From the IMG/VR virus record IMGVR_UViG_3300013116_000108, positions 124,001 through 188,000 of that record: a DNA stretch of 64,000 nucleotides, one strand, 5' to 3'. Positions within the stretch are counted from its first letter, which is position 1. The number at the start of each line of letters is the position of its first letter. Of the stretch, positions 704 through 48,409 are shown piece after piece. Made by a program: the position numbers and the translations under genes. The notes beneath the pieces are model-generated. The model was not told the DNA's origin. It worked only from the letters and a program-made list of their open reading frames with translations, and made no database searches.

Positions 704-710
704 TATTTAG
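704..710 (-). promoter_or_regulatory. Late promoter (CTAAATA, T4 TATAAATA-like) for gp13
   Basis: TAAATA core recurs upstream of most structural transcription units; gp55-like sigma encoded in window. Confidence 0.6.
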
Positions 711-1975
711 CTCGTTAGCAATAGTATTGTTTCGGGATTTAAACGGCCGTTAAGTTTAGTTTCTGTTACTTTGAGGTTTTCGAAGAACTTTTTACGTTGT
801 ATTTTACCACAATTATTAAACTCTTTAAGTTGTTCTTCTGGTTTTCTTAGTGTTTTACACACACTTTGCTTTTCGTCATACCTAATTAGTGTAGTACCTT
901 TAACTTCTAATCCTGTGCCGTCACGTTTTTGTTTAAGCGGATCTATTGAAGAAGTGATGTAATACCCTAACTTTCTAGTTTTTGTGTTATATACCCAAAG
1001 CTCGTTAGCCTTAATAATGTCTACAGGGTTAATACTTACAAGTGCTAGTTTCTCATCAGACTTCTTATATTTTACTCTTGTTACTAGTTTTTCAGCACTT
1101 TTAGGTTTAACTTTACGAGGTTTACGAGTAAGTTTTGCTTCTGACATTAGCATATCACAAGCGTCGCAAATCAATTTATATGCTTGGTACCTACTTTTTA
1201 TTTCTTCATCAGTAAAAACAGCAAAACCTTCCTCAAGTTGACTACGCCAATCTAATTCTTGTTCTGTCATTTTTGCTTTTTGTTTTGCTGTAGGTGGGTT
1301 TAGTAACTCATGTAACTCATTATACCCTGGTTCATAAAAAGTTTTAATAATTTTAGCATGATTACCTTTACATTGATGTACTCTTAACCATTTTAGAGGA
1401 GTAAAAGTTTTTAAATCTATAAGTTCTACTCCAGATTCCATAACGTCATCAATTTCAACTGTCATTCTAATAGCCGCGGCATATAGGCGTTGTTGAATTG
1501 TAGGTTGATATACTTGGACTTTTTCTGCTTCTTCTTTTGCTTTTTCTTCTACAAGAGTTTTACCTTTCTCAATAGCACCTGCTATCTGAACTTTAATCCA
1601 ATCTTTTGTTGGCTTAATAACACCCATTGTACCTGGCAATGATTGCCAGTGTTCATCTTCTTTTTTATTATAATCTGGCATTCCACGTAACAGCATACGG
1701 CAATTTATAGATGTTGTTGTACCTATAACGTAACTAGGAACAGCCTTAGCACACTTAATATCGTCTTTGCTATAGCCATTTTGGTTCATCCATTCGTATG
1801 TATGCTTAACTAATTCATCTGGTTTAAACGTATGGTAATACCAAGAACTAGTTCCTTGCTTAAAACGGTGGTATTGAGCTCCGTCCCATTCTTCCCAACC
1901 ATCCCACTTGGGTTCTAGCAACTTATCAGCCGCTGTTATTCTAGTTGATTTTCGTAGTTGTTTACGTTTTGCCAA
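707..1975 (-). CDS. Hypothetical phage protein, 422 aa
   Basis: Long ORF, TTG start with AGGAG SD; no recognisable catalytic motif. Confidence 0.8.
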   Translation of the reverse strand: MAKRKQLRKSTRITAADKLLEPKWDGWEEWDGAQYHRFKQGTSSWYYHTFKPDELVKHTYEWMNQNGYSKDDIKCAKAVPSYVIGTTTSINCRMLLRGMPDYNKKEDEHWQSLPGTMGVIKPTKDWIKVQIAGAIEKGKTLVEEKAKEEAEKVQVYQPTIQQRLYAAAIRMTVEIDDVMESGVELIDLKTFTPLKWLRVHQCKGNHAKIIKTFYEPGYNELHELLNPPTAKQKAKMTEQELDWRSQLEEGFAVFTDEEIKSRYQAYKLICDACDMLMSEAKLTRKPRKVKPKSAEKLVTRVKYKKSDEKLALVSINPVDIIKANELWVYNTKTRKLGYYITSSIDPLKQKRDGTGLEVKGTTLIRYDEKQSVCKTLRKPEEQLKEFNNCGKIQRKKFFENLKVTETKLNGRLNPETILLLTS

Positions 1976-2109: not shown

Positions 2110-3264
2110 ATGCCAAGAATCTCAATGTGGAAAGAAAATAAGACTTTTGATTATAGTTTCCACGACAACCGAATCCGTGAAATGTTTACAATAGGCGGTA
2201 CAGGTGTTAATATACACAAATATTTAGGTACATTCCAACAAGCATCTGGAGATGCTACAAAACCTAAGTATGACACAATTACAGAGAATCGTATACAAGA
2301 CTTACTATTTTTAGAAAATAGAGATCGAAAATATGATCAAACTGTATATCAGATGCGAGGGTTATATAATGTTCAAGATATTGACTTTGACCTAACACAG
2401 TTTGGTTTATTTTTAGCAAATGATACTCTCTTTATAAACTTCCATATGTCTGACATGATAGACATATTAGGAAGAAAGTTGATGAGCGGAGATGTATTAG
2501 AGCTACCTCATCTAAAAGATTTTTATCCTTTAGACACAGATTTAAGCACATCATTAAGAAGATATTATGTTGTACAAGATGCTAGTAGAGCCGCAGAAGG
2601 ATTTAGTCCTACTTGGTATCCACATTTATGGAGAGTAAAATGTACACCAATAGTGGATTCACAAGAATATCGAGATATTCTTGGTGATAAAGACGATTCT
2701 TCTAGTTTAAAAAGTTTACTATCTACATATAAAAAAGAATTAGAAATTAATAATGCTATTATACAACAAGCAAATAAAGAAGTTCCTAAAACAGGGTACG
2801 ATACAGAAAAATTTTATGTAGTACCAACTAACGAAGATGGTACTCCGGCTAAGGCTAGTAGTAAAACAGCAGATACTACAACAACTAAAGCAAGTTCATC
2901 AAATGATAGCACTAATCAAACTGCTGTTTCGCCTGTAGGTAACGGGTGGCTAGGTGGCTATTTAAGTGGTGACGGATTACCACCAAACGGGTTTCACGTA
3001 ACGCCTGCTATACAATTTCCAACTAGTCCTTTAGAAGGCGAATATATTTTAAGACTTGATTATATGCCTAATAGATTATTTAGATACGACGGTAAACGAT
3101 GGATTAAAGTTGAGGATAATGTTAGAACAACATTAGACGGAACTGGATTAACACAACGTGATTCATTTGTTAATAACACTTCAACATATATAGATAACAA
3201 AGGTGTAGCAAAACCAGGTAAAACTGGTTTAAGTTCAGCACTAGAACCAAAGGCAGACGAATAA
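2110..3264 (+). CDS. gp14: Neck/head-completion protein, T4 gp14-like
   Basis: N-terminal DY..HD..IREMFTIGG, FGLFL..D, GDVLELPHL segments; position between gp13-like and gp15-like genes. Confidence 0.65.
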   Translation: MPRISMWKENKTFDYSFHDNRIREMFTIGGTGVNIHKYLGTFQQASGDATKPKYDTITENRIQDLLFLENRDRKYDQTVYQMRGLYNVQDIDFDLTQFGLFLANDTLFINFHMSDMIDILGRKLMSGDVLELPHLKDFYPLDTDLSTSLRRYYVVQDASRAAEGFSPTWYPHLWRVKCTPIVDSQEYRDILGDKDDSSSLKSLLSTYKKELEINNAIIQQANKEVPKTGYDTEKFYVVPTNEDGTPAKASSKTADTTTTKASSSNDSTNQTAVSPVGNGWLGGYLSGDGLPPNGFHVTPAIQFPTSPLEGEYILRLDYMPNRLFRYDGKRWIKVEDNVRTTLDGTGLTQRDSFVNNTSTYIDNKGVAKPGKTGLSSALEPKADE

Positions 3265-3479
3265 TGGAAAGCGTAATTAAAATAGTTTCTGAATACTTAG
3301 AAGTAGACAATGTTAAACCCGAGTCGCATCTTGTAGATGATTTAGGTGCTGACGACTTTGACACTATTGAATTAATAATAAAAGTTGAAAAAAGTTTAGG
3401 TGTAAAAATTTCAGACGAAGAAGGTAGTAACATAAAAACAGTACAAGACCTTATTAATGTAGTACAAGGAAATCAATAA
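3264..3479 (+). CDS. Acyl carrier protein-like protein lacking the phosphopantetheine serine
   Basis: Aligns by eye to AcpP over its full length (DLGADDFDTIEL vs DLGADSLDTVEL; ISDEE..IKTVQD); TAATG-coupled on both sides. Confidence 0.85.
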   Translation: MESVIKIVSEYLEVDNVKPESHLVDDLGADDFDTIELIIKVEKSLGVKISDEEGSNIKTVQDLINVVQGNQ

Positions 3480-4897
3480 TGAAAACTTTTTTCTATGATG
3501 AACAAATTCGAAGATTTATTTTACAATTTGTTAGAATGTTTTCTCATTACCAAGTAGAATACGGTAAAAATAGAGACGGCAATACAACACTTTATCAAGT
3601 TCCTGTTAGATACGGTGATTCTAGCAGACAAGCGTCTGCTATTATGAAGCATAATAGCGAAAACGGAATACCTACATCACCTCTTATAACTTGTTACATT
3701 TCAGATTTACAATATGACAGAGATAGAATGCAACAACCTAGTCACATCGATAAAATGCATGTTAGAACTAGAGGAATAAATGAAAATACAGGAGCATATA
3801 CTCAACAACAAGGAGAAGCATATACAATAGAACGTCATATGCCAACTCCATATAGACTAAACATGAATGTTGATATATGGACAACTAACACAGAACAAAA
3901 ATTACAGTTGCTAGAACAAATATTAACACTATTCAATCCTGATATGGAAATACAAAGTACAGACAATTATATAGATTGGACTAGTTTAAGTTACGTTGAA
4001 TTAACTGGGCAAACATTTACAAGCAGAAGTATACCTACTGGAACAGATGACCAAATAGATATTTCTACATTACAATTTAGTATGCCTATATGGTTAAGTT
4101 TACCTGCTAAAGTTAAAAAATTAGGAGTTATTAGAAGTGTTGTAAGTGGAATACATGACAATTCAGGTACTATTAAAGACTTAGACATAGGCTTATTATA
4201 CGGTAATAGAGTCTCAATTACGCCTAATCAGTACGGTATTATTTTATTAAACGGACAAGTACAATTAATTGACTCAGCAGATGCTGTTAATCCAAACACA
4301 TCTACTGTTATTAGTACTAGTAGTGTTGGACCTAGACCAGAATGGGAAAGCCTTATTAATAACTGGGGTAAAATGACACCATTAGGAAAAGCCACTATTG
4401 CTAATGGAACTAGCCAATTACGAGTATCAACAACATCAGAACCAGACGGTGCTGAAGTTATAGGAACAGTAGCATTACATCCATCTAGCAAAGATATATT
4501 ATTATTTACTGTAGACAATGACACTATACCAACAAACACTTTAGACCCTATAGATGCTATTGTCGATCCTAGTAAAAAAGGTCCAGGTGCCGGACTGAAT
4601 GCATCAGCAGACGGGCAAAGATACTTGATTATAAATGACATAGGCGCTACGGGTAATGTAGATGGTGCTGATGCTTGGAAGGGTGCTAGTAACGAAGATT
4701 TGATAGCCTCAGCGAACGATATTATACAGTATAAAAACAATAAGTGGCAAGTAGTATACGATGCTTCTACTAAAGCAACTGACACAGATTATCTAACAAA
4801 TAGTAAAACCGGAATTCAATATAAATGGGATGGATCAAAATGGGTAAAAAGTTACGAAGGAGAATACGAGGCGGGATCATGGAGACTAGTACTTTAA
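3479..4897 (+). CDS. gp15: Tail sheath stabiliser / tail terminator, T4 gp15-like, with C-terminal extension
   Basis: FFYDEQIRRFILQF..F, VPVRYG, PTPY.L, QLLEQIL..FNP motifs typical of gp15. Confidence 0.8.
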   Translation: MKTFFYDEQIRRFILQFVRMFSHYQVEYGKNRDGNTTLYQVPVRYGDSSRQASAIMKHNSENGIPTSPLITCYISDLQYDRDRMQQPSHIDKMHVRTRGINENTGAYTQQQGEAYTIERHMPTPYRLNMNVDIWTTNTEQKLQLLEQILTLFNPDMEIQSTDNYIDWTSLSYVELTGQTFTSRSIPTGTDDQIDISTLQFSMPIWLSLPAKVKKLGVIRSVVSGIHDNSGTIKDLDIGLLYGNRVSITPNQYGIILLNGQVQLIDSADAVNPNTSTVISTSSVGPRPEWESLINNWGKMTPLGKATIANGTSQLRVSTTSEPDGAEVIGTVALHPSSKDILLFTVDNDTIPTNTLDPIDAIVDPSKKGPGAGLNASADGQRYLIINDIGATGNVDGADAWKGASNEDLIASANDIIQYKNNKWQVVYDASTKATDTDYLTNSKTGIQYKWDGSKWVKSYEGEYEAGSWRLVL

Positions 4898-5316
4898 CTG
4901 GTGTTGGTTGTTTATTTTGGTCTCGAAAAACTAATCGTTTTCTTTTTGTTTTAAGAAATACTAAAACATATAAATTTACATGGGCCCTTGTAGGTGGTAA
5001 AGTTGAAGTAGATGAAACTGTTTATGAGGCTATGTGTAGAGAAACTATAGAAGAATTAGGTTCGTTGCCTGACATTATCAAAACTATTCCAATAGAAAAA
5101 TTTACACATAAAAAAAATAATTTTATATACGAAACATTTGTTAATATAGTTGAAGATGAATTTATTCCTGTATTAAATGACGAACACGTGGGGTATGCTT
5201 GGGTAGATGTAGATCATTTTCCAAAGCCGTTACACCCTGGATTATATAATACTCTTAATATTGATGCTATTAATGATAAATTAAAAACCTTAGTTAATCA
5301 TTATATTAATGTTTAA
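4879..5316 (+). CDS. Nudix hydrolase
   Basis: Nudix box GGKVEVDETVYEAMCRETIEELG and LNDEH..YAW...PLHPG; likely start ATG 4879 rather than 4825. Confidence 0.85.
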   Translation: METSTLTGVGCLFWSRKTNRFLFVLRNTKTYKFTWALVGGKVEVDETVYEAMCRETIEELGSLPDIIKTIPIEKFTHKKNNFIYETFVNIVEDEFIPVLNDEHVGYAWVDVDHFPKPLHPGLYNTLNIDAINDKLKTLVNHYINV

Positions 5317-6067
5317 AAGATCCTATATCTAATTCTTGTACAAATTCTCTATATGTAAGATAGCGAACATTTTTATACCATTTATAATTATCTGGATATC
5401 CATTAACATTATTATCAACAATAGTAAATGAGGTGTCTGGATATGCTCCAAATATTTGGCACATGTTTGCCTCCCATTTTTCACTTGATACTGAATAATT
5501 CTGTGGCATATAACCAGGCGAGCCAGCATACATATTAGAATTATATCCTTCGCCACCTTTTTGTCCTTCATAACCTATCATATATACACTTCGGTGTTTA
5601 TCAAAACAAGCCATATATACTGCCATTGCTCCAGCATTCATTTGTACACCGTAAGGAATTAAATGAAACTTGCCTGGATGTTGTAAACAATTAGGTGCTG
5701 TCGAATATACAATTCTCTCATCGGCGTATGGTTTATCTGAATATTCTGTACTATTAGCAATTTCGTTAGTTATTTCTTTGCCTGTAGCAATTAAAAAGTC
5801 TGCTTGGAATTCTCTAGACAAAGCATTACAGCCATAAGTTTGGCAAGCCATAGATCCCAACACTCCACCCCTATGGCCAGATAATAAATTTATGTTGAAT
5901 TTATTTCTAGATTCGCCATTACCAATACACACAGCAATACCCATATGAGTATCATTGTATACCGTACGTGGTATCCACTCTCTTGATTCTTTACGTTGGT
6001 TATTTTCGTATCTGACAGATGTTATAAAAAATTCACCGTCATACTCGTCACTGTTCTTTCCTAGCAT
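5306..6067 (-). CDS. Maf/DUF115/CstII-like putative glycosyltransferase
   Basis: CIGNGESR...YGCNAL...YMIGY motifs resembling the GNGPS/CN/YL.G.D pattern of CstII/Maf-type enzymes; paralog of 17528..18181. Confidence 0.5.
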   Translation of the reverse strand: MLGKNSDEYDGEFFITSVRYENNQRKESREWIPRTVYNDTHMGIAVCIGNGESRNKFNINLLSGHRGGVLGSMACQTYGCNALSREFQADFLIATGKEITNEIANSTEYSDKPYADERIVYSTAPNCLQHPGKFHLIPYGVQMNAGAMAVYMACFDKHRSVYMIGYEGQKGGEGYNSNMYAGSPGYMPQNYSVSSEKWEANMCQIFGAYPDTSFTIVDNNVNGYPDNYKWYKNVRYLTYREFVQELDIGSFKH

Positions 6068-6164: not shown

Positions 6165-9100
6165 TTACATTCTGCCAACAACTACTTCAATTGTACCTTC
6201 GCCTTCGTGATCTTCTAATGCTTTACCAATTACTTGGCCCATTTTTGGATCTTCTTCAGCTCTAGCCATACCGTTACCAGCACTTACCATCATGTCACCT
6301 TTTTTGACAGATCCTGTAACTTTACAAGGAACTCTACCAACTAATGCTACAGAACATTTGTTCTCAGCATCCATTTCAGCGTTCATTAAGTAAGCCGGGT
6401 TAGATGTAACAACACCCGCTACTGATTTACAACCATCAATATCACAAAGTGATACTTCATGAGTTCCACCAAAGTGTACAACTGTACCAGGCGCATATTC
6501 GGCATCAGCCGCATAGCACTCAGCCAAGTCAGCGTATTGAGCCGCTGTTGCTGTACCAGTTAGTGTAGCAACTCTCATGTCAGCATAAGAACTAACAGTT
6601 ACGTTGCCTGCTGTAGTACCGTCTTCAGAAGTGTTAATAGCCGCAAATTGATCAGCACTTTCGTCCCAAATCATTGCCACGTTAGCACTTGATCCACGCT
6701 CTACAACCCAACCCGAGTCATAAGCAGGAGAACCAGACTGTCCAGTAGCCCAAATTTGTAGCGGATCTTCAACAGTTGTGTTAGTTGAACTAACAGTTGT
6801 TGTTGAACCGTTTACAGTTAAGTTACCTGAAACAATCATGTTTCCTGTACAAGTAGCGTCATCATTCAATTGAATGATACCAGTTCCGTTTGATTGAAGT
6901 ACTAAGTTTTCGTTAGTTACAGCATTTTTAACTGAGTTACCAATAACTGTAACGTTACCTGCTTTAGCACCATCTGGTAATAACACACCAGTTGCCGAGT
7001 CATCAGCGTGAGCTGAAATACTGACACCAGAGCCCATTGTAGTAGCTCTGTTTAGTTCAATACCAGAACCAGCAGATAGTTGTAGTTTACCAGAGCCTGA
7101 ACCACCATTAACACTTAGGTTTTGGTTAGCATCAGTACCCATAGTAATTGTACCACTATCATCTTGTAGTACTTGTTTACCATTAACGTATAATGATCCA
7201 GAGGATACATACAAGTCTTTCCATTGAGCGTTTGAGGCACCCAAGTCATGTCCTGTTGTTCCGTTGGAGTTAACGTTTGGTATAAGACCAGCACTTGTAA
7301 ATTTAGCAATAGATGTACCAGCAACTGTGAACTGAATTTCGTCAGCATCAGCAGTTGGCTCAACATTAATGCTAGTGTCCGCATCAGCATCTTGCATATC
7401 AGTGATAGTTGATGTAGTAGTTAATACTCTAGCATCAATTGTATCACCAGTAGCAGGTGCTTCTGTGAACGTTAGTGTTGTTCCACTTACAGCGTAAGCA
7501 GTAGTAGGAATCTGTACCACACCATTGATTGCTACCAATGTTGTAGAAGTAGTTCCTGCTGAACTTAGTGTAAATGCGGTAGTAGAATCGTTACCAGAGA
7601 ATGAATCTGCTGTCATAACTGTAAAGTCAGCACCAGCGTTCCATTCAGAACCAGTGTAGATTTCTTGTGTACCTAAAGTAGTGTTGAATCTATACATACC
7701 TGTAGCAGGTGATCCCGGACGTTGTGCCGTTGTACCTACCGGTATAATCATAGAGTCAGTAGCAGAGATGTGTAATGTAGCATCAGTAGTCGGCGAAGCC
7801 GTTCCTAAACCTACGTTACCTGTAGAACCTTGAACAAATAAAGCGTTAGCATCATTGTCTGATTCGATTCTAAAGTCAACATCTGCACTTGCTTCGTTAA
7901 CAACAATCTCTTGACCAGCAACACCTTCAATTAAAAGTTTGCCAGATGTAGATGAAATTGTATTTCCATCTATTGAGATATTGTCAACAGCCGCCGCTGT
8001 AGTTGTTAATGTAGTACCATCAAATGTTAAGTTAGCACTATCTTCTAAAGCACCACCAGTACCAGCGTATGTAACACGTCCACTTGTTAGGTCTTCAATA
8101 ACAGCATCTGCCAAAGTAGCAGTTCCGTCAACCTCTAAGTGTCCAGCCGCTGTAACTTTACCAGTTACGTCTAATGTACCACCAACTGCTGTGTTACCAC
8201 TAGCATGAGCAACTGTGAAACTTGAAGAAACACTAAATGTTGTTCCATCAAATGTTAAGTTAGCATCATCTTCTAAAGCACCGCCTGTACCAGCAATAGT
8301 AATTCTATTGTTAGTCAAGTCAGATACTGTAGCAGAGTTCATTGTAACACCAGCGGATGTAGCCGATAGAGCCGTTGTTGAATCTAGTTCAACAGTAAAG
8401 GCACCATTTGACCCAGTATCACTGATTGTAGCAGTTGAGTTATTTTCAACTAGTCTTGTAACTTCACCTGTAGCGGAGTCAACATACGCCTTAGTAGCCG
8501 CATCTTGAGCCGAAGTAGGATCAGCAACACCAGTTACTTTGTTAGATCCCATTGCGATTGTTTGAGATCCAGCAACTGTTAACGAACCATTGATTGCTGT
8601 AGCACCGTTTGATGTTAATGTACCGGCAACTGTAGCCGCGCCATCAACGTCTAGTAATCCACCCATGTGTAGGTTTTCAGCAACACCCATACCACCAAAA
8701 ACTACTAAAGCACCTGAAGTGTTTGAAGTAGATCCAGTTGTAGCGTTTGCGTCAATACGTCCTGTCACATCTAATGTACCAGCAACTACTGTATTACCAG
8801 TAGCACTTGCTACTGTCATCTTGTTAGTAGCAACACTAAAGTCACCCGCAACATCACCAGCGCCACTAATATCTAAACCAGCACCAATGTACTGTCCAGT
8901 AGTAGTTACGTTAGTTCCGTCATATGTGAATCCAGCGCCATCTTCTAAGATACCGTTAGTTCCTGCTGTTACAACACGACCGTCAGTTAATGTGCCTGAA
9001 GTTACAGAGCCAACAACAATATTACCTGCTGTTCCACTCATTACTTCTGAAGTGTTAGTAACGTCTGTCAAGTAAACAAAAGCATCTGCTGAGTTATCAT

Positions 9101-11162
9101 AACCAAAGTAGCCAAGTTTAGCACTTCCGTCATAATATCTAAATTCAATACCTCTGTCTTTACCGTCGTCTGAACCAGGAGCAGAATCACCACCCAATGT
9201 AAAGATTGGATCATCAATAGTTACAGTTGTTGAGTTTGTAGTTGATGTTGTACCGTTAACTGTTAAGTTACCAGTAACAATAAAGTTCTCAGACATAGTA
9301 ATATCTGAACCGCCTCTAGCAATAGCACCACCATTAAATGTCATGCCGCCTGCTGTAAACGTAGATCCGTCGAATGAACCAACTTCTGTGTTGTCAGTTG
9401 TGAAAGTAATCTTTCCATCTGAACCAGTGTCAGTTACAACAACACTTGAATCTAGTTTAGAGATAGTATCACCTGCCGCCGAAACTGCGTTATCCGCATA
9501 GGCTTTCGTAGCAAGGTCTAAGTTATCACTTGGTGAGTAAGAACTGTGAGCTCTAATTTGTAAGGCACCTGCCGCTGTCGCACCAACTGTTAAAACATCA
9601 GTTGCTGTTCCACCAACATTAGCGTTTAATACAATAGCACCATCTTCTGTACTGTTTGTAACGTCAATAGCCTTACCAAGTAATTCAGCAAATTGTGTAG
9701 CATTGCCACCGTCGTCATCACCAGTCCAAGCAATAGAACCTAAAGCATCACCGTCTGCCGGAGAAGCACTATCTTTTACGAAGTGTATTCTTCCGCCTTC
9801 ACCGTCAGCGTTAGTATTCTTAAGTTGAACGTCTGGTTTGGAACCACCGGACTGCTCTAATAAAAGATCAGAACCAATTGTACCGTTAACTGTAATAGTG
9901 TCGCCTGCGGCGTCACCTAAAGTTACAGCACCGTTTAAAGTAGTAAGTCCAGCAACTGTAAGAGTACCGTCAACATCAGCGTTACCGCCCATGTGTAAGT
10001 TCTCAGCAAGTCCTAAACCACCATCAACGATTACAGCACCAGTAGTATTACTAGTTGATGATGTAGTAGCGTTAAAGTTTGAGATGCCTGTTACGTTTAA
10101 AGTATCTCCAACAACTACGGCACCTGCCGCACTTGCTGTAAAGTTACCACCAACGTCTAAAGCACCTTCTGTTACTATTTGTCCGCCTGTATAAATGTCT
10201 TCTGCGACACCTACACCACCGTCAACAATTAAAGCACCAGTTGTCTTTGAAGACGATGCCGTTGTTGCGTTTAAGTTGACAGCACCAGTTACATCAAGTG
10301 TACCACCGACAGTAGTATTACCACTTGCCGCTGTTACAGTAAATTCACTGCCGTCGCCAACTGCGAACGTAGTACCATCAAAGTGTAGGTTAGCGTCATC
10401 TTCGACAACACCACTCGCACCTGCGATTAGTACTCTGTTATCTGTTAAGTCAGAAATTTTAGCACTTGCTAAAGTTACTTCTGACGATGTAGCAGAGAAA
10501 ACTGTAGTTGAATCGATTTCCATTGCTACCGATCCAGTACCACTGTCGTCTACTGTTACTGTTGTATTTCCTTCTACAAGACGTGTACTTGAACCTAGTT
10601 GAGTATCAACATAGGCTTTAGTTGCCGCGTCTTGGTCCGCACTTGGATCAGCAACGCCAGTAATTCTATTACTGCCTAATGCTAAGTTTCCGTTCGGATT
10701 AATTGTAAAGTCTCCTGAGCTAGTAGTAATTCCATTAGCATCAAGAGTGGTATTGTCAACGACCAACGAACCCGCCTGTAAAGCGGCGTACGATGAAATG
10801 GTAATGTTGCCTGCTGTTGATCCAGTTTCTGTAGTAGTCGCTACAACGAATTGATCAGCACTTTCGTCCCAACCAATAAACACGTTTGCGTCGTCACCAC
10901 GTTCTGTGACCATTCCAGAGTCAACTGCTCCAGAGCCAGATGCTCCAGAAGATAGTACCATTAAAGGATCTGCTACTGTAGTATTAGTACTGTTTACAGT
11001 AGTAGTAGTTCCTGAGACCGTTAAGTTACCAGATATTGTTAAATTCGAACCATATGTAATCGAATCAGCAAGTTTACCAGCCGTAATTGCGTTATCCGCA
11101 ATCTTCGCCGTTGTGACCGCCGAGTCGGTAATCTGGTTCGTTTTTATTCTAGTTACAGCCAT
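6165..11162 (-). CDS. Long repetitive tail-fibre/virion fibre protein with C-terminal intramolecular chaperone-like domain
   Basis: Gly/Thr/Ser-rich beta repeats (DAATKAYVD, ANLTFDGTT, GALIVDGGVG); C-terminal ADLAE.Y...GVVT.NPAYLMN...VALVGRVPCKV...IGKALE domain; start ATG 11162 with GGAG SD. Confidence 0.8.
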   Translation of the reverse strand: MAVTRIKTNQITDSAVTTAKIADNAITAGKLADSITYGSNLTISGNLTVSGTTTTVNSTNTTVADPLMVLSSGASGSGAVDSGMVTERGDDANVFIGWDESADQFVVATTTETGSTAGNITISSYAALQAGSLVVDNTTLDANGITTSSGDFTINPNGNLALGSNRITGVADPSADQDAATKAYVDTQLGSSTRLVEGNTTVTVDDSGTGSVAMEIDSTTVFSATSSEVTLASAKISDLTDNRVLIAGASGVVEDDANLHFDGTTFAVGDGSEFTVTAASGNTTVGGTLDVTGAVNLNATTASSSKTTGALIVDGGVGVAEDIYTGGQIVTEGALDVGGNFTASAAGAVVVGDTLNVTGISNFNATTSSTSNTTGAVIVDGGLGLAENLHMGGNADVDGTLTVAGLTTLNGAVTLGDAAGDTITVNGTIGSDLLLEQSGGSKPDVQLKNTNADGEGGRIHFVKDSASPADGDALGSIAWTGDDDGGNATQFAELLGKAIDVTNSTEDGAIVLNANVGGTATDVLTVGATAAGALQIRAHSSYSPSDNLDLATKAYADNAVSAAGDTISKLDSSVVVTDTGSDGKITFTTDNTEVGSFDGSTFTAGGMTFNGGAIARGGSDITMSENFIVTGNLTVNGTTSTTNSTTVTIDDPIFTLGGDSAPGSDDGKDRGIEFRYYDGSAKLGYFGYDNSADAFVYLTDVTNTSEVMSGTAGNIVVGSVTSGTLTDGRVVTAGTNGILEDGAGFTYDGTNVTTTGQYIGAGLDISGAGDVAGDFSVATNKMTVASATGNTVVAGTLDVTGRIDANATTGSTSNTSGALVVFGGMGVAENLHMGGLLDVDGAATVAGTLTSNGATAINGSLTVAGSQTIAMGSNKVTGVADPTSAQDAATKAYVDSATGEVTRLVENNSTATISDTGSNGAFTVELDSTTALSATSAGVTMNSATVSDLTNNRITIAGTGGALEDDANLTFDGTTFSVSSSFTVAHASGNTAVGGTLDVTGKVTAAGHLEVDGTATLADAVIEDLTSGRVTYAGTGGALEDSANLTFDGTTLTTTAAAVDNISIDGNTISSTSGKLLIEGVAGQEIVVNEASADVDFRIESDNDANALFVQGSTGNVGLGTASPTTDATLHISATDSMIIPVGTTAQRPGSPATGMYRFNTTLGTQEIYTGSEWNAGADFTVMTADSFSGNDSTTAFTLSSAGTTSTTLVAINGVVQIPTTAYAVSGTTLTFTEAPATGDTIDARVLTTTSTITDMQDADADTSINVEPTADADEIQFTVAGTSIAKFTSAGLIPNVNSNGTTGHDLGASNAQWKDLYVSSGSLYVNGKQVLQDDSGTITMGTDANQNLSVNGGSGSGKLQLSAGSGIELNRATTMGSGVSISAHADDSATGVLLPDGAKAGNVTVIGNSVKNAVTNENLVLQSNGTGIIQLNDDATCTGNMIVSGNLTVNGSTTTVSSTNTTVEDPLQIWATGQSGSPAYDSGWVVERGSSANVAMIWDESADQFAAINTSEDGTTAGNVTVSSYADMRVATLTGTATAAQYADLAECYAADAEYAPGTVVHFGGTHEVSLCDIDGCKSVAGVVTSNPAYLMNAEMDAENKCSVALVGRVPCKVTGSVKKGDMMVSAGNGMARAEEDPKMGQVIGKALEDHEGEGTIEVVVGRM

Positions 11163-11208
11163 TTCCACAACTCCTTATATAAAAGATTGTAAGGTTTCTT
11201 TGTAATGT

Positions 11209-47197: not shown

Positions 47198-48409
47198 TTA
47201 TAGTTCTTCTCTATTTGTAGCGGCATCCCAGGCTTTACTATGTAACCCACCCCCACACATTTGTTGGCATTCGTAAGTACATAATTTGTGACTTGGATCT
47301 TTCCACGTTAAAGGTAAGATACTTTGAAAGTATTCATGATAAAATATTTCTTCTGCTGTATGTTGTTCTAAGTTGTTCCAACCTACACCATATTCTTTCT
47401 CTAACTTGTTATAATGTGTCATATCTTCTTGCTTTGTAGCCGCAATGTGGTTACAAGGCCATAAGTTCATTTCGCTATCAATATACATCATTTTATTTTC
47501 TTTAAAGTCGCAGGTAACTTGCGACATGTCTGATGATTCAATGATATCTTTATAAATTTTAGCGCCAGCATCTGTAATGTTTAATTCTTTTGCTGTTTCG
47601 GTTATCTCAATGTCTTGTTGATAAGATGTTCCATCAACATATTGAATCTTGCTTATTTCATCACCTTTAACTTCTTTACGATTTTTTGCTACTTTCTTAA
47701 TATCTGTTTCAACTGTAATTGCTTTTGGTGTATTTTGACTTTTTTCTAAGTGTTTAGCATTTTTATTTTCAACTTCGGCATAGTTATATTCCCAATTCCT
47801 AGTAGAAACATGCTTGTCAAATTGCCAAAAACCCATGTCCTTTGCTAGTTGTTGTGCTTCATCGACTTGATGTTTGTTATGCTCGAACACAATCATTTTC
47901 CATCTTGCTTTTCCGCCAGCATTAATATATGCTTGAGCATTAGCCATTACACGTTCGTGTTTAATTCCTATACGATATAACTTGTTAGTATCTGCTAATC
48001 CGTCAATACTAAATGTCATAATCTTTTCTATGCCTTGTGCCCTTTCGGCATAACCCATTGCTTTACCTACTCTAGCCCAACTTTCTGGTGATCTCATACT
48101 ACCGTTAGTTTCCACATCTATAATATAAGGACGTTTTGCTGTCTCAATAATAATTTCTTCCCAGTCAGGTGTCATAACAGGGTCGCCGTGACAACCACAA
48201 AATACCATATTAACTGGATTATCAATAGTAACAATATGTTTCATTCCGTCTAAAAACTTGTTCCATTGTGGGGCAAGTATGTGCCTTTGCCTCAAAGTAG
48301 GACGAACAATGCTAGTTCCCATGAAATGTCGAGGACATAATGGACAAGCAACGTTACAAAATGTTGATGTTTCTACTTGAAATGAATCTATTTCTTTAAA
48401 ATTAAACAT
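47198..48409 (-). CDS. Radical SAM protein with C-terminal SPASM/Twitch-like Cys cluster
   Basis: CNVACPLC, GDP, ETNG, FSIDG motifs; C-terminal C...WPC...C..C...C. Confidence 0.9.
   Translation of the reverse strand: MFNFKEIDSFQVETSTFCNVACPLCPRHFMGTSIVRPTLRQRHILAPQWNKFLDGMKHIVTIDNPVNMVFCGCHGDPVMTPDWEEIIIETAKRPYIIDVETNGSMRSPESWARVGKAMGYAERAQGIEKIMTFSIDGLADTNKLYRIGIKHERVMANAQAYINAGGKARWKMIVFEHNKHQVDEAQQLAKDMGFWQFDKHVSTRNWEYNYAEVENKNAKHLEKSQNTPKAITVETDIKKVAKNRKEVKGDEISKIQYVDGTSYQQDIEITETAKELNITDAGAKIYKDIIESSDMSQVTCDFKENKMMYIDSEMNLWPCNHIAATKQEDMTHYNKLEKEYGVGWNNLEQHTAEEIFYHEYFQSILPLTWKDPSHKLCTYECQQMCGGGLHSKAWDAATNREEL

What the first reader, a model, noticed from the sequence alone, without database searches (positions are those of the whole stretch)
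2110..4897. Acyl carrier protein with Ser-to-Asp at the pantetheine site, embedded between neck genes
Seen: 3264..3479 is ACP-like along its length, but the invariant D-S-L reads D-D-F (GAC GAC TTT). It is TAATG-coupled to gp14 upstream and gp15 downstream, so it should be made late with virion proteins. Established: without that Ser an ACP cannot be phosphopantetheinylated or carry acyl chains, and host ACP is also a binding partner of proteins such as SpoT and MukB. Inference: this is a non-loadable ACP mimic/decoy, with Asp possibly imitating the phosphate, that titrates host ACP partners. Alternatively it is an ACP fold co-opted as a virion or assembly factor.
Basis: partly seen in the sequence, partly recalled or inferred. 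Interest (0 to 1): 0.65.

Follow-up and report, generated by a model that had tools for sequence, protein, structure and literature searches.

The report
Serine-less acyl carrier protein of marine phages
A marine jumbo phage carries a small, well-conserved copy of the bacterial acyl carrier protein that has lost the one serine needed to carry fatty acids, so it must act purely by binding other proteins; it belongs to a widespread, undescribed phage family that moves between late-gene slots rather than being a neck part.

Summary
ORF 3264..3479 (71 aa) is a full-length AcpP-type acyl carrier protein: Pfam PP-binding at 33 bits, PDB ACPs at E 4e-12, and an AF2 model with pLDDT 91 and TM 0.9 to AcpP. 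Its D-S-L motif reads D-D-F. It is TAATG-coupled on both sides, and independent metagenomes confirm the codon.

It is not a singleton. About 94 protein clusters (57-100% identity, marine) share an invariant L-G-A-D-x-F-D motif. Position x, the former Ser, is the most variable site of the protein: 10 residue types, site omega about 1, against 0.24 for the whole gene. None of the 45 closest clusters has Ser; they carry D, N, E, V, G, A, I or P. So loss of the prosthetic group is conserved, but Asp as a phosphate mimic fails in this lineage.

The gene is accessory and mobile. PA5oct-like phages, about 79 related loci and two 300 kb relatives have gp14-position and gp15 genes without it. Other inserts occupy that junction elsewhere. 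Family members in other phages sit inside endolysin/spanin cassettes, after DUF6267, or beside radical SAM genes.

Best reading (inferred): a permanently apo ACP that docks on ACP-client proteins late in infection. The function is untested.

The parts
2110..3264 (+). Upstream gene, 384 aa: a PA5oct-type virion structural protein in the position of gp14. Homology to T4 gp14 was not shown.
   Evidence: phrog_11591 E 3.7e-92. No Pfam hit. No PDB sequence hit. hhalign against T4 gp14 gave probability 0.1. Homologues in PA5oct-like phages are annotated as structural proteins.
3262..3266 (+). TAATG overlap: the stop of the upstream gene shares a base with the start of the ACP-like gene.
   Evidence: Read directly from the sequence. 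Tight spacing is kept in all 15 contigs of the clade.
3264..3479 (+). Serine-less AcpP-type acyl carrier protein homologue, 71 aa.
   Evidence: PF00550 33 bits. PDB ACPs E 4e-12. AF2 pLDDT 91, TM 0.9 to AcpP. dN/dS 0.24-0.30.
3342..3371 (+). Start of helix II, L27-G-A-D-x-F-D-T-I-E36. L27, G28, A29, D30, F32, D33 and E36 are invariant across the family.
   Evidence: Entropy is 0 at these seven columns in 88 family members, and none of their codons shows a nonsynonymous change in 41 unique genes.
3354..3356 (+). Codon 31, GAC (Asp), in place of the phosphopantetheine-bearing Ser. It is the most variable site of the family.
   Evidence: 10 residue types, entropy 3.04 bits. 19 nonsynonymous against 3 synonymous changes, site omega about 1.0. 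Confirmed by independent contigs.
3477..3481 (+). TAATG overlap: the stop of the ACP-like gene shares a base with the start of the gp15-like gene.
   Evidence: Read directly from the sequence.
3479..4897 (+). gp15-type tail terminator / sheath stabiliser, 472 aa. The N-terminal ~230 aa are homologous to T4 gp15; the rest is a long C-terminal extension.
   Evidence: PF16724 E 2.2e-27 over residues 5-234. The profile hits T4 gp15 structures 4huh and 3j2m at E 1.5e-4.
4825..5316 (+). NUDIX hydrolase, the last gene of the four-gene co-directional unit. Its synteny with gp15 is conserved even in PA5oct-like phages.
   Evidence: PF00293 E 2e-15. Synteny is shown. The unit is bounded by genes on the opposite strand at 707..1975 and 5306..6067.

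Best explanation
Shown: this is an AcpP-derived four-helix protein that has lost the prosthetic-group serine. It is kept under purifying selection as a single-copy accessory gene. Related marine myophages carry family members in different, mostly late-gene, slots: here between the gp14-position protein and gp15, and elsewhere inside endolysin/spanin cassettes. The N-terminal half of helix II, the face that real ACPs use to dock on their client enzymes, is invariant. The former Ser position itself is free to vary.

Inferred: the protein works only by protein-protein binding. It acts as a permanently 'apo' ACP that occupies the ACP-docking site of one or more ACP-client proteins of the host. Candidates are the holo-ACP synthase or an acyl-ACP-dependent acyltransferase of phospholipid or lipid A synthesis. 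In canonical docking, residue 31 would face the client's empty pantetheine tunnel, which would explain why only that residue is unconstrained. The expected effect is a block or diversion of host lipid metabolism late in infection, around assembly and lysis. It is not a neck component. The gp14/gp15 junction is simply a permissive insertion site.
For: The fold and sequence are those of type II FAS ACP.

The family has about 94 clusters, and 79 of 88 full-length members lack Ser. L27, G28, A29, D30, F32, D33, E36 and E42 are invariant, while site 31 has 10 residue types.

Codon counting on 41 unique genes gives a whole-gene dN/dS of 0.24. Site 31 has omega about 1 (19 nonsynonymous, 3 synonymous changes). 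Codons 27-30, 32, 33 and 36 have no nonsynonymous change. In the '60% clade' the site uses CCA, TCA and GCA, which is simple first-position drift.

With Ser36 of E. coli ACP aligned to site 31 without gaps, family D30, E36 and E42 correspond to D35, E41 and E47. These residues ion-pair with AcpS (bioRxiv 10.1101/2025.01.28.635281).

Apo-ACP is a known strong inhibitor of glycerol-3-phosphate acyltransferase and of growth in E. coli (review PMC3896788). Apo-AcpP binds and activates MukB as well as holo-AcpP does (PMC8602292). So Ser-independent ACP-partner binding is established biology.

The gene is accessory and mobile. It is absent between the same neighbours in PA5oct-like phages and in about 79 related loci. 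It is absent from two relatives of 300 and 317 kb. The genome holds one copy only, yet that genome also carries DUF6267, SNase, DnaB and radical SAM homologues of the phages that hold the gene in other slots. Other contexts are endolysin-ACP-i-spanin-o-spanin, endolysin-spanins-ACP, DUF6267-ACP and radical SAM-ACP. In relatives the gp14/gp15 junction holds GIY-YIG endonucleases, heme oxygenase plus bilin reductase, or an unknown ORF.

No phosphopantetheinyl transferase is found in the 204 kb record.
Against: No binding partner, host or phenotype is known, so the decoy mechanism is inference from conservation and from E. coli precedents.

Several helix II and loop positions that are acidic in AcpP are basic or variable here: K40, K43, and an invariant K48 where AcpP has Glu. 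Leu37 is an invariant Phe. The client, if any, may therefore not be a classical AcpP client.

Nine family clusters carry Ser at the site, so some members might still be loaded.

In clade 2 only D or E occurs (four codons, five D/E interchanges, no other residue). This suggests the site is not contact-free in every lineage.

The genome record is only 56% complete, so a phage partner enzyme or PPTase could lie outside it.

No transcript evidence for the gene was obtained.
Confidence: 0.4

Rival explanations
1. Adaptor or subunit of a phage-encoded enzyme, or an activator rather than an inhibitor. The ACP fold would be used as an obligate small partner, as AcpP is for MukB. Candidate partners are the radical SAM or DUF6267 proteins that these phages share.
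For: Some family members lie directly after DUF6267, with a radical SAM/SPASM gene downstream, or directly after two radical SAM genes. The window's genome has a DUF6267 homologue and three radical SAM paralogues. AcpP acts as a Ser-independent activating subunit of MukB.
Against: In most loci, about 55 of 65 contigs, the neighbours are structural or lysis genes, not these enzymes. In the window's genome the gene is more than 50 kb away from DUF6267 and the nearest radical SAM gene. No co-variation or complex evidence exists.
Confidence: 0.2
2. Neck or tail-completion assembly factor, or a minor virion protein: the ACP fold co-opted to chaperone or cap the gp14-position protein or gp15.
For: The gene is translationally coupled to both neighbours. 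The position is conserved in all 15 contigs of the clade. Most contexts are late-gene contexts.
Against: PA5oct-like phages, about 79 related loci and two nearly complete 300 kb relatives keep homologous neighbours without any ACP-like gene. The same family sits in lysis cassettes or next to replication genes in other phages. The same junction accepts unrelated inserts.
Confidence: 0.1
3. Arms-race decoy. The former Ser site is under diversifying selection because a host factor, such as a defence sensor or an ACP-modifying or ACP-cleaving enzyme, recognises exactly this spot.
For: In the window clade, codon 31 shows 7 nonsynonymous changes where about 3.1 are expected under neutrality (site omega about 2.3; Poisson P about 0.04). 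There are eight residue types among 45 close clusters, flanked by invariant residues.
Against: Family-wide site omega is about 1.0 with no significant excess (P 0.33). The method is crude parsimony on few sequences. The residues seen are those that commonly begin helices, as neutral drift would give.
Confidence: 0.1
4. Phosphate-mimic decoy as proposed by the first reader: Asp31 imitates the phosphoserine linkage so that the protein passes for holo-ACP and titrates holo-ACP partners such as SpoT.
For: Acidic residues are the commonest class at the site in two of the three clades. Clade 2 has only D or E, through five interchanges.
Against: The window's closest relatives (87-93% identity) have N, G, E or V. 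Others in the clade have I, P or A. A carboxylate cannot replace the 20 Å pantetheine arm that SpoT-type partners need.
Confidence: 0.05
5. Decaying remnant of a once functional phage ACP with no present function.
For: The catalytic residue is lost and the site evolves neutrally.
Against: Whole-gene dN/dS is 0.07-0.30 in three clades. Eight or more residues are invariant across sequences down to about 57% identity. The frames are intact in all loci, and the gene is retained after relocation to several slots.
Confidence: 0.03

Closest known systems
Bacterial AcpP (type II fatty acid synthase acyl carrier protein; Pfam PF00550)
   Same: Same length and the same four-helix topology. 38-42% identity to solved AcpPs, TM 0.9. 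The L-G-A-D motif and the helix II acidic residues equivalent to D35, D38, E41 and E47 are conserved.
   Different: Ser36 is replaced and the position is free to vary. Leu37 is an invariant Phe. Glu53 is an invariant Lys. The gene is encoded by a phage among late genes, with no PPTase or fatty acid synthesis genes detected nearby.
Ser-bearing ACP homologues of cultured phages (phrog_5934; for example Prochlorococcus phage P-HM1, Burkholderia phage BCSR5, Olleya phage Harreka_1, Vibrio phage P018-4)
   Same: Small phage-borne PP-binding proteins, usually annotated as auxiliary metabolic genes. The P-HM1 gene also lies among structural genes.
   Different: All four that were checked keep the D-S-L-D motif. 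They are at most 49% identical to the window protein. No cultured phage in the collection carries a member of the G-A-D-x-F-D family.
Apo-ACP as an inhibitor in E. coli (overproduced unmodified ACP blocks glycerol-3-phosphate acyltransferase and growth)
   Same: An ACP without its prosthetic group acts by binding a client enzyme. This is the mechanistic precedent for the proposed mode of action (PMC3896788).
   Different: That is an experimental overexpression effect of the host's own protein. Here the apo state is hard-wired genetically and the gene is phage-encoded. The target is unknown.
AcpP as a prosthetic-group-independent subunit of MukBEF
   Same: Shows that an ACP fold can serve as a structural or regulatory partner whether or not Ser36 is modified (PMC8602292).
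   Different: That finding comes from E. coli. There is no evidence that this phage's unknown marine host has MukBEF. No interaction was tested here.

Membership tests
Acyl carrier protein / PP-binding (PF00550) | Sequence match above the curated threshold | tested here: met
   33 bits against a gathering score of 20.8, residues 3-66 of 71. PDB ACPs at E 4e-12.
Acyl carrier protein / PP-binding (PF00550) | Four-helix bundle with the attachment site at the N-terminus of helix II | tested here: met
   AF2 pLDDT 91, with helix II starting at residue 31. TM 0.90-0.94 to AcpP structures.
Acyl carrier protein / PP-binding (PF00550) | Conserved Ser of the D-S-L motif that receives 4'-phosphopantetheine | tested here: not met
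   D31 (GAC, 3354-3356) aligns on the Ser. 79 of 88 family members lack Ser. The protein therefore has an ACP fold but is not a functional carrier.
Acyl carrier protein / PP-binding (PF00550) | Actual phosphopantetheinylation and acyl loading | not testable with these tools
   Needs AcpS/Sfp assays with mass spectrometry.
Acyl carrier protein / PP-binding (PF00550) | Cognate PPTase or ACP-dependent enzymes encoded alongside | tested here: not met
   No PF01648 match in the 204 kb record at E up to 1. The neighbours are structural genes and a NUDIX hydrolase. The record is only 56% complete.
T4-type neck / tail-completion module | Downstream gene is a gp15 homologue | tested here: met
   PF16724 E 2e-27. 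T4 gp15 structures at E 1.5e-4.
T4-type neck / tail-completion module | Upstream gene is a gp14 homologue | tested here: not met
   No Pfam or PDB hit. hhalign against T4 gp14 gave probability 0.1. The fold model was too poor to search. Position alone suggests an analogue.
T4-type neck / tail-completion module | The ACP-like gene is a conserved member of the module | tested here: not met
   Absent in PA5oct-like phages, in about 79 related loci, and anywhere in two 300 kb relatives.
Phage accessory gene (moron / auxiliary gene) | Patchy presence among related genomes and a variable insertion slot | tested here: met
   At least five different contexts. The junction also hosts GIY-YIG endonucleases and heme oxygenase plus bilin reductase in relatives.
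Phage accessory gene (moron / auxiliary gene) | Own promoter or terminator, or deviant base composition | tested here: not met
   No promoter-like or terminator-like sites beyond chance (24 found, 19 expected). GC is 0.31-0.33, the same as the flanks. The gene is read through by translational coupling.

The most novel reading that the evidence does not exclude
A widespread family of marine phage proteins has turned the universal fatty-acid carrier into a prosthetic-group-free binding module. This hard-wired apo-ACP would be made with the lysis and assembly genes and would shut down or redirect the host's ACP-dependent membrane-lipid enzymes, or an SMC-type partner, to time or aid lysis. The former active-site residue, pointing into the client's empty tunnel, would be the only position free to drift or to be pushed by an arms race.
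Probability: 0.25. Interest if true: 0.75.

Novelty: new variant of a known kind. Interest (0 to 1): 0.55.

Why it matters
ACP is one of the most connected proteins of the bacterial cell, and phage-borne ACPs are routinely annotated as 'auxiliary metabolic genes' that would boost lipid synthesis. This family shows that such an annotation can be wrong in kind. About 90% of its members cannot carry anything, yet they are strongly conserved and abundant in ocean metagenomes. If the protein is a built-in apo-ACP inhibitor or adaptor, it would be a new host-takeover principle. It would also be a ready-made natural probe for prosthetic-group-independent ACP interactions. The recurrent placement in endolysin/spanin cassettes would link lipid metabolism to lysis control. 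The case also gives a clean natural experiment: a former active-site residue evolving neutrally between invariant neighbours.

Tried and rejected
1. Complex prediction with the gp14-position protein, the gp15-like protein and the ACP-like protein, using my own alignments: score 0.00, 'no answer'. This is not evidence either way.

2. Fold of the gp14-position protein: pLDDT 49, unusable, so no fold search was run. The profile against PDB and hhalign against T4 gp14 found nothing.

3. Expression: the only RNA run holding any of the stretch gave one 189-nt contig inside gp15 (4103-4290). This says nothing about the ACP-like gene.

4. PPTase search in the genome: none found, but the record is 56% complete.

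5. Literature: six full-text searches found phage ACPs mentioned only as auxiliary metabolic genes, and no description of a Ser-less phage ACP family. Only the held open-access library was searched.

6. 'Ser-bearing members are ancestral': rejected. They nest among Pro and Thr members in the tree and use TCA next to CCA and GCA.

7. 'Foreign composition marks a recent transfer': rejected.

8. The large representative-protein search was not used.
Full report
**The object.** The window is part of a 204 kb IMG/VR virus record, 56% complete by CheckV. An identical protein also occurs on a 291 kb contig. ORF 3264..3479 (+) encodes 71 residues. It matches Pfam PP-binding over nearly its whole length (E 7.4e-8, 33 bits, gathering score 20.8). 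It also matches the PHROG 'acyl carrier protein'. It aligns end to end with solved type II ACPs (best E 4e-12), and its second Asp falls on the Ser of the A-D-S-L-D motif. An AF2 model built on 42 relatives has pLDDT 91 and the canonical helices (2-12, 31-45, 51-55, 60-70). It superposes on E. coli and H. pylori AcpP at TM 0.90-0.94. Codons 3351-3359 are GAC GAC TTT. Both gene junctions are TAATG overlaps. Contigs of independent sequencing runs, one from a different study, cover the gene without a difference in it.

**The neighbours.** The downstream gene is a real gp15 homologue with a long C-terminal extension. The upstream gene is a PA5oct-type virion structural protein (phrog_11591). I could not link it to T4 gp14 by Pfam, by PDB profile search, by hhalign or by fold. 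It is 'gp14' by position only. The four genes at 2110..5316 (structural protein, ACP-like, gp15-like, NUDIX) form one co-directional unit bounded by opposite-strand genes. There are no internal promoter-like or terminator-like sites beyond chance, and there is no compositional break.

**Not a singleton: a large Ser-less family.**
- The word-based protein search returned 118 relatives.
- About 94 clusters, at 57-100% identity, come from marine metagenomes including Tara. They share the motif L-G-A-D-x-F-D.
- The next-best hits are ordinary ACPs with G-A-D-S-L/M-D.
- In 88 full-length members the flanking positions L27, G28, A29, D30, F32 and D33 are invariant, as are E36 and E42.
- Position 31 is the most variable of the whole protein: P24, D13, E10, N9, S9, G7, V5, T5, A4, I2, with entropy 3.04 bits.
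- None of the 45 clusters closest to the window protein (74% identity or more) has Ser. They carry D, N, E, V, P, I, G or A.
- A tree places the family as one clade apart from true ACPs (SH-aLRT 93) and needs at least 21 changes of state at the site. The Ser-bearing members nest among Pro and Thr members rather than at the base.

**Selection.**
- Pairwise Nei-Gojobori dN/dS is 0.15-0.25 for diverged pairs.
- Parsimony counting on 41 unique genes from IMG/VR and ENA loci gives a whole-gene dN/dS of 0.24.
- Codon 31 has 19 nonsynonymous and 3 synonymous changes, giving site omega about 1.0, the highest in the gene. The excess over neutrality is not significant (P 0.33).
- Codons 27-30, 32, 33 and 36 have no nonsynonymous change at all.
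- The three clades differ. In the window clade, codon 31 has 7 nonsynonymous changes where about 3.1 are expected (omega about 2.3). My Poisson estimate from these figures is P about 0.04. In clade 2 only D or E occurs, with all four GAN codons and five interchanges. In the '60% clade' the loci show Pro (CCA/CCG), Ala (GCA) and Ser (TCA).
- So loss of the prosthetic group is old and conserved. Asp is not conserved in the window's lineage. A negative charge may matter in one other lineage only.

**Where the gene sits.**
- PA5oct-like Pseudomonas phages (Arenbergviridae) have the structural protein directly followed by the gp15-like gene and NUDIX, with no ACP.
- Of 80 IMG/VR loci retrieved with the gp15-like protein, only one, from the window's close clade, has the ACP-like gene. 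The other 79 have gp15 at about 50% identity and lack it.
- Two relatives of 300 and 317 kb (81% and 89% complete) have no PP-binding match anywhere.
- In some relatives the same junction holds GIY-YIG homing endonucleases, a heme oxygenase plus a ferredoxin-dependent bilin reductase, or an unknown 285-aa ORF. It is an insertion hot-spot.
- Family members in other phages lie between an endolysin and an i-spanin/o-spanin pair (about 25 contigs), or directly after the spanin pair (about 16 contigs). I checked the transmembrane segment and the lipobox of these spanins.
- Other members lie after a DUF6267 protein near DnaB, or after two radical SAM genes.
- The window's genome has one copy only. 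It also has DUF6267, SNase (72% identical), DnaB (57%) and radical SAM homologues of those phages. The gene has therefore relocated within a related group of phages.
- Four ACP homologues of cultured phages that I checked all keep D-S-L-D.

**How it most likely works.** What is shown is the following.
- The fold is that of an ACP.
- The attachment residue is missing.
- The rest of the protein is under purifying selection.
- The start of helix II is invariant.
- The former Ser site evolves neutrally or faster.
- Presence among relatives is patchy, the slot varies, and the neighbours are mostly late genes.

The following is inference. With Ser36 of E. coli ACP on site 31 and no gaps in helix II, family residues D30, E36 and E42 correspond to D35, E41 and E47. 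These form ion pairs with AcpS and belong to the general partner-recognition helix. Apo-ACP is a strong inhibitor of glycerol-3-phosphate acyltransferase and of growth. Apo-AcpP serves MukB as well as holo-AcpP does. I therefore propose a hard-wired apo-ACP that docks on ACP-client proteins. Residue 31 would point into the client's empty pantetheine tunnel, which explains why it alone is unconstrained. The result would be a block or diversion of host lipid metabolism late in infection, and the repeated placement in lysis cassettes fits this. My confidence is about 0.4.

There are points against this reading. Several AcpP acidic positions are Lys here, and Leu37 is an invariant Phe. Clade 2 keeps an acidic residue. 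Some members carry Ser. Host and partner are unknown.

'Non-loadable ACP under selection' is supported. 'Asp mimics phosphate' is not supported for this lineage. SpoT titration conflicts with the statement that SpoT does not bind apo-ACP. The 'virion or assembly factor' reading has nothing in its favour beyond adjacency. The complex prediction gave no answer and counts neither way.

**Novelty.** ACP homologues in phages are known, and so are prosthetic-group-independent roles of ACP. I did not find a conserved, abundant, Ser-less phage ACP family with a freely evolving former active site and a lysis/late-gene association in the literature held here. I rate it a new variant of a known kind, of moderate to good interest, with function still to be tested.

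Noticed in passing
L055:4438-4998, L099:4516-4995, L097:3816-4998, L039:4119-4976 (the junction equivalent to window 3264..3479): In related phages the gp14-position/gp15 junction carries other inserts. These are GIY-YIG homing endonucleases (two loci), a heme oxygenase plus a ferredoxin-dependent bilin reductase, and an unknown 285-aa ORF with no Pfam hit. It is an insertion hot-spot.
   Followed up: yes
L016:4371-6028; L115:2683-4219: In other marine myophages the Ser-less ACP lies inside a genuine lysis cassette. One layout is endolysin, ACP, i-spanin (N-terminal TM), o-spanin (lipobox). The other is M15 peptidase, i-spanin, o-spanin, ACP. No holin was identified. A 124-nt gap precedes the ACP gene in the first type.
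   Followed up: partly
L027:559-5207: A 111-aa family member (G-A-D-D-F-T) with a 36-residue N-terminal extension follows two large radical SAM-domain proteins. A QueC-like gene lies nearby. This may be a different functional context.
   Followed up: no
window 3479..4897: The gp15-like protein is 472 aa, but only residues 5-234 match the T4 gp15 domain. The C-terminal ~240 residues are conserved among relatives (invariant W, G and Y residues) and have no assigned fold.
   Followed up: no
window 4825..5316 and L001:6254-6745: A NUDIX hydrolase directly follows, and by ORF call overlaps, the gp15-like gene. This holds in the window, in nearly all ~80 related loci, and in PA5oct-like Pseudomonas phages. 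It is an unusually stable enzyme/structural-gene pairing.
   Followed up: partly
window 6165..11168 (-): A 1667-aa ORF with internally repeated Thr/Gly/Ser-rich segments and higher GC (0.39-0.45, against 0.31-0.37 in the flanking genes). Probably a fibre protein.
   Followed up: no
G000:C1 69063-70879, 67519-68517, 74980-75906; window 47261-48397 (G000 171261-172397): The genome holds a DUF6267 homologue and three radical SAM/SPASM-like paralogues. In a related phage the Ser-bearing ACP variant sits directly after DUF6267.
   Followed up: partly
L121, L127, L128, L166: Motif variants occur within the family: L-G-S-D-P-F-D, D-L-D-A-D-S-F-D, and a distant member at 36% identity with Thr at the site. 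So even the 'invariant' Gly and Ala are occasionally replaced.
   Followed up: no
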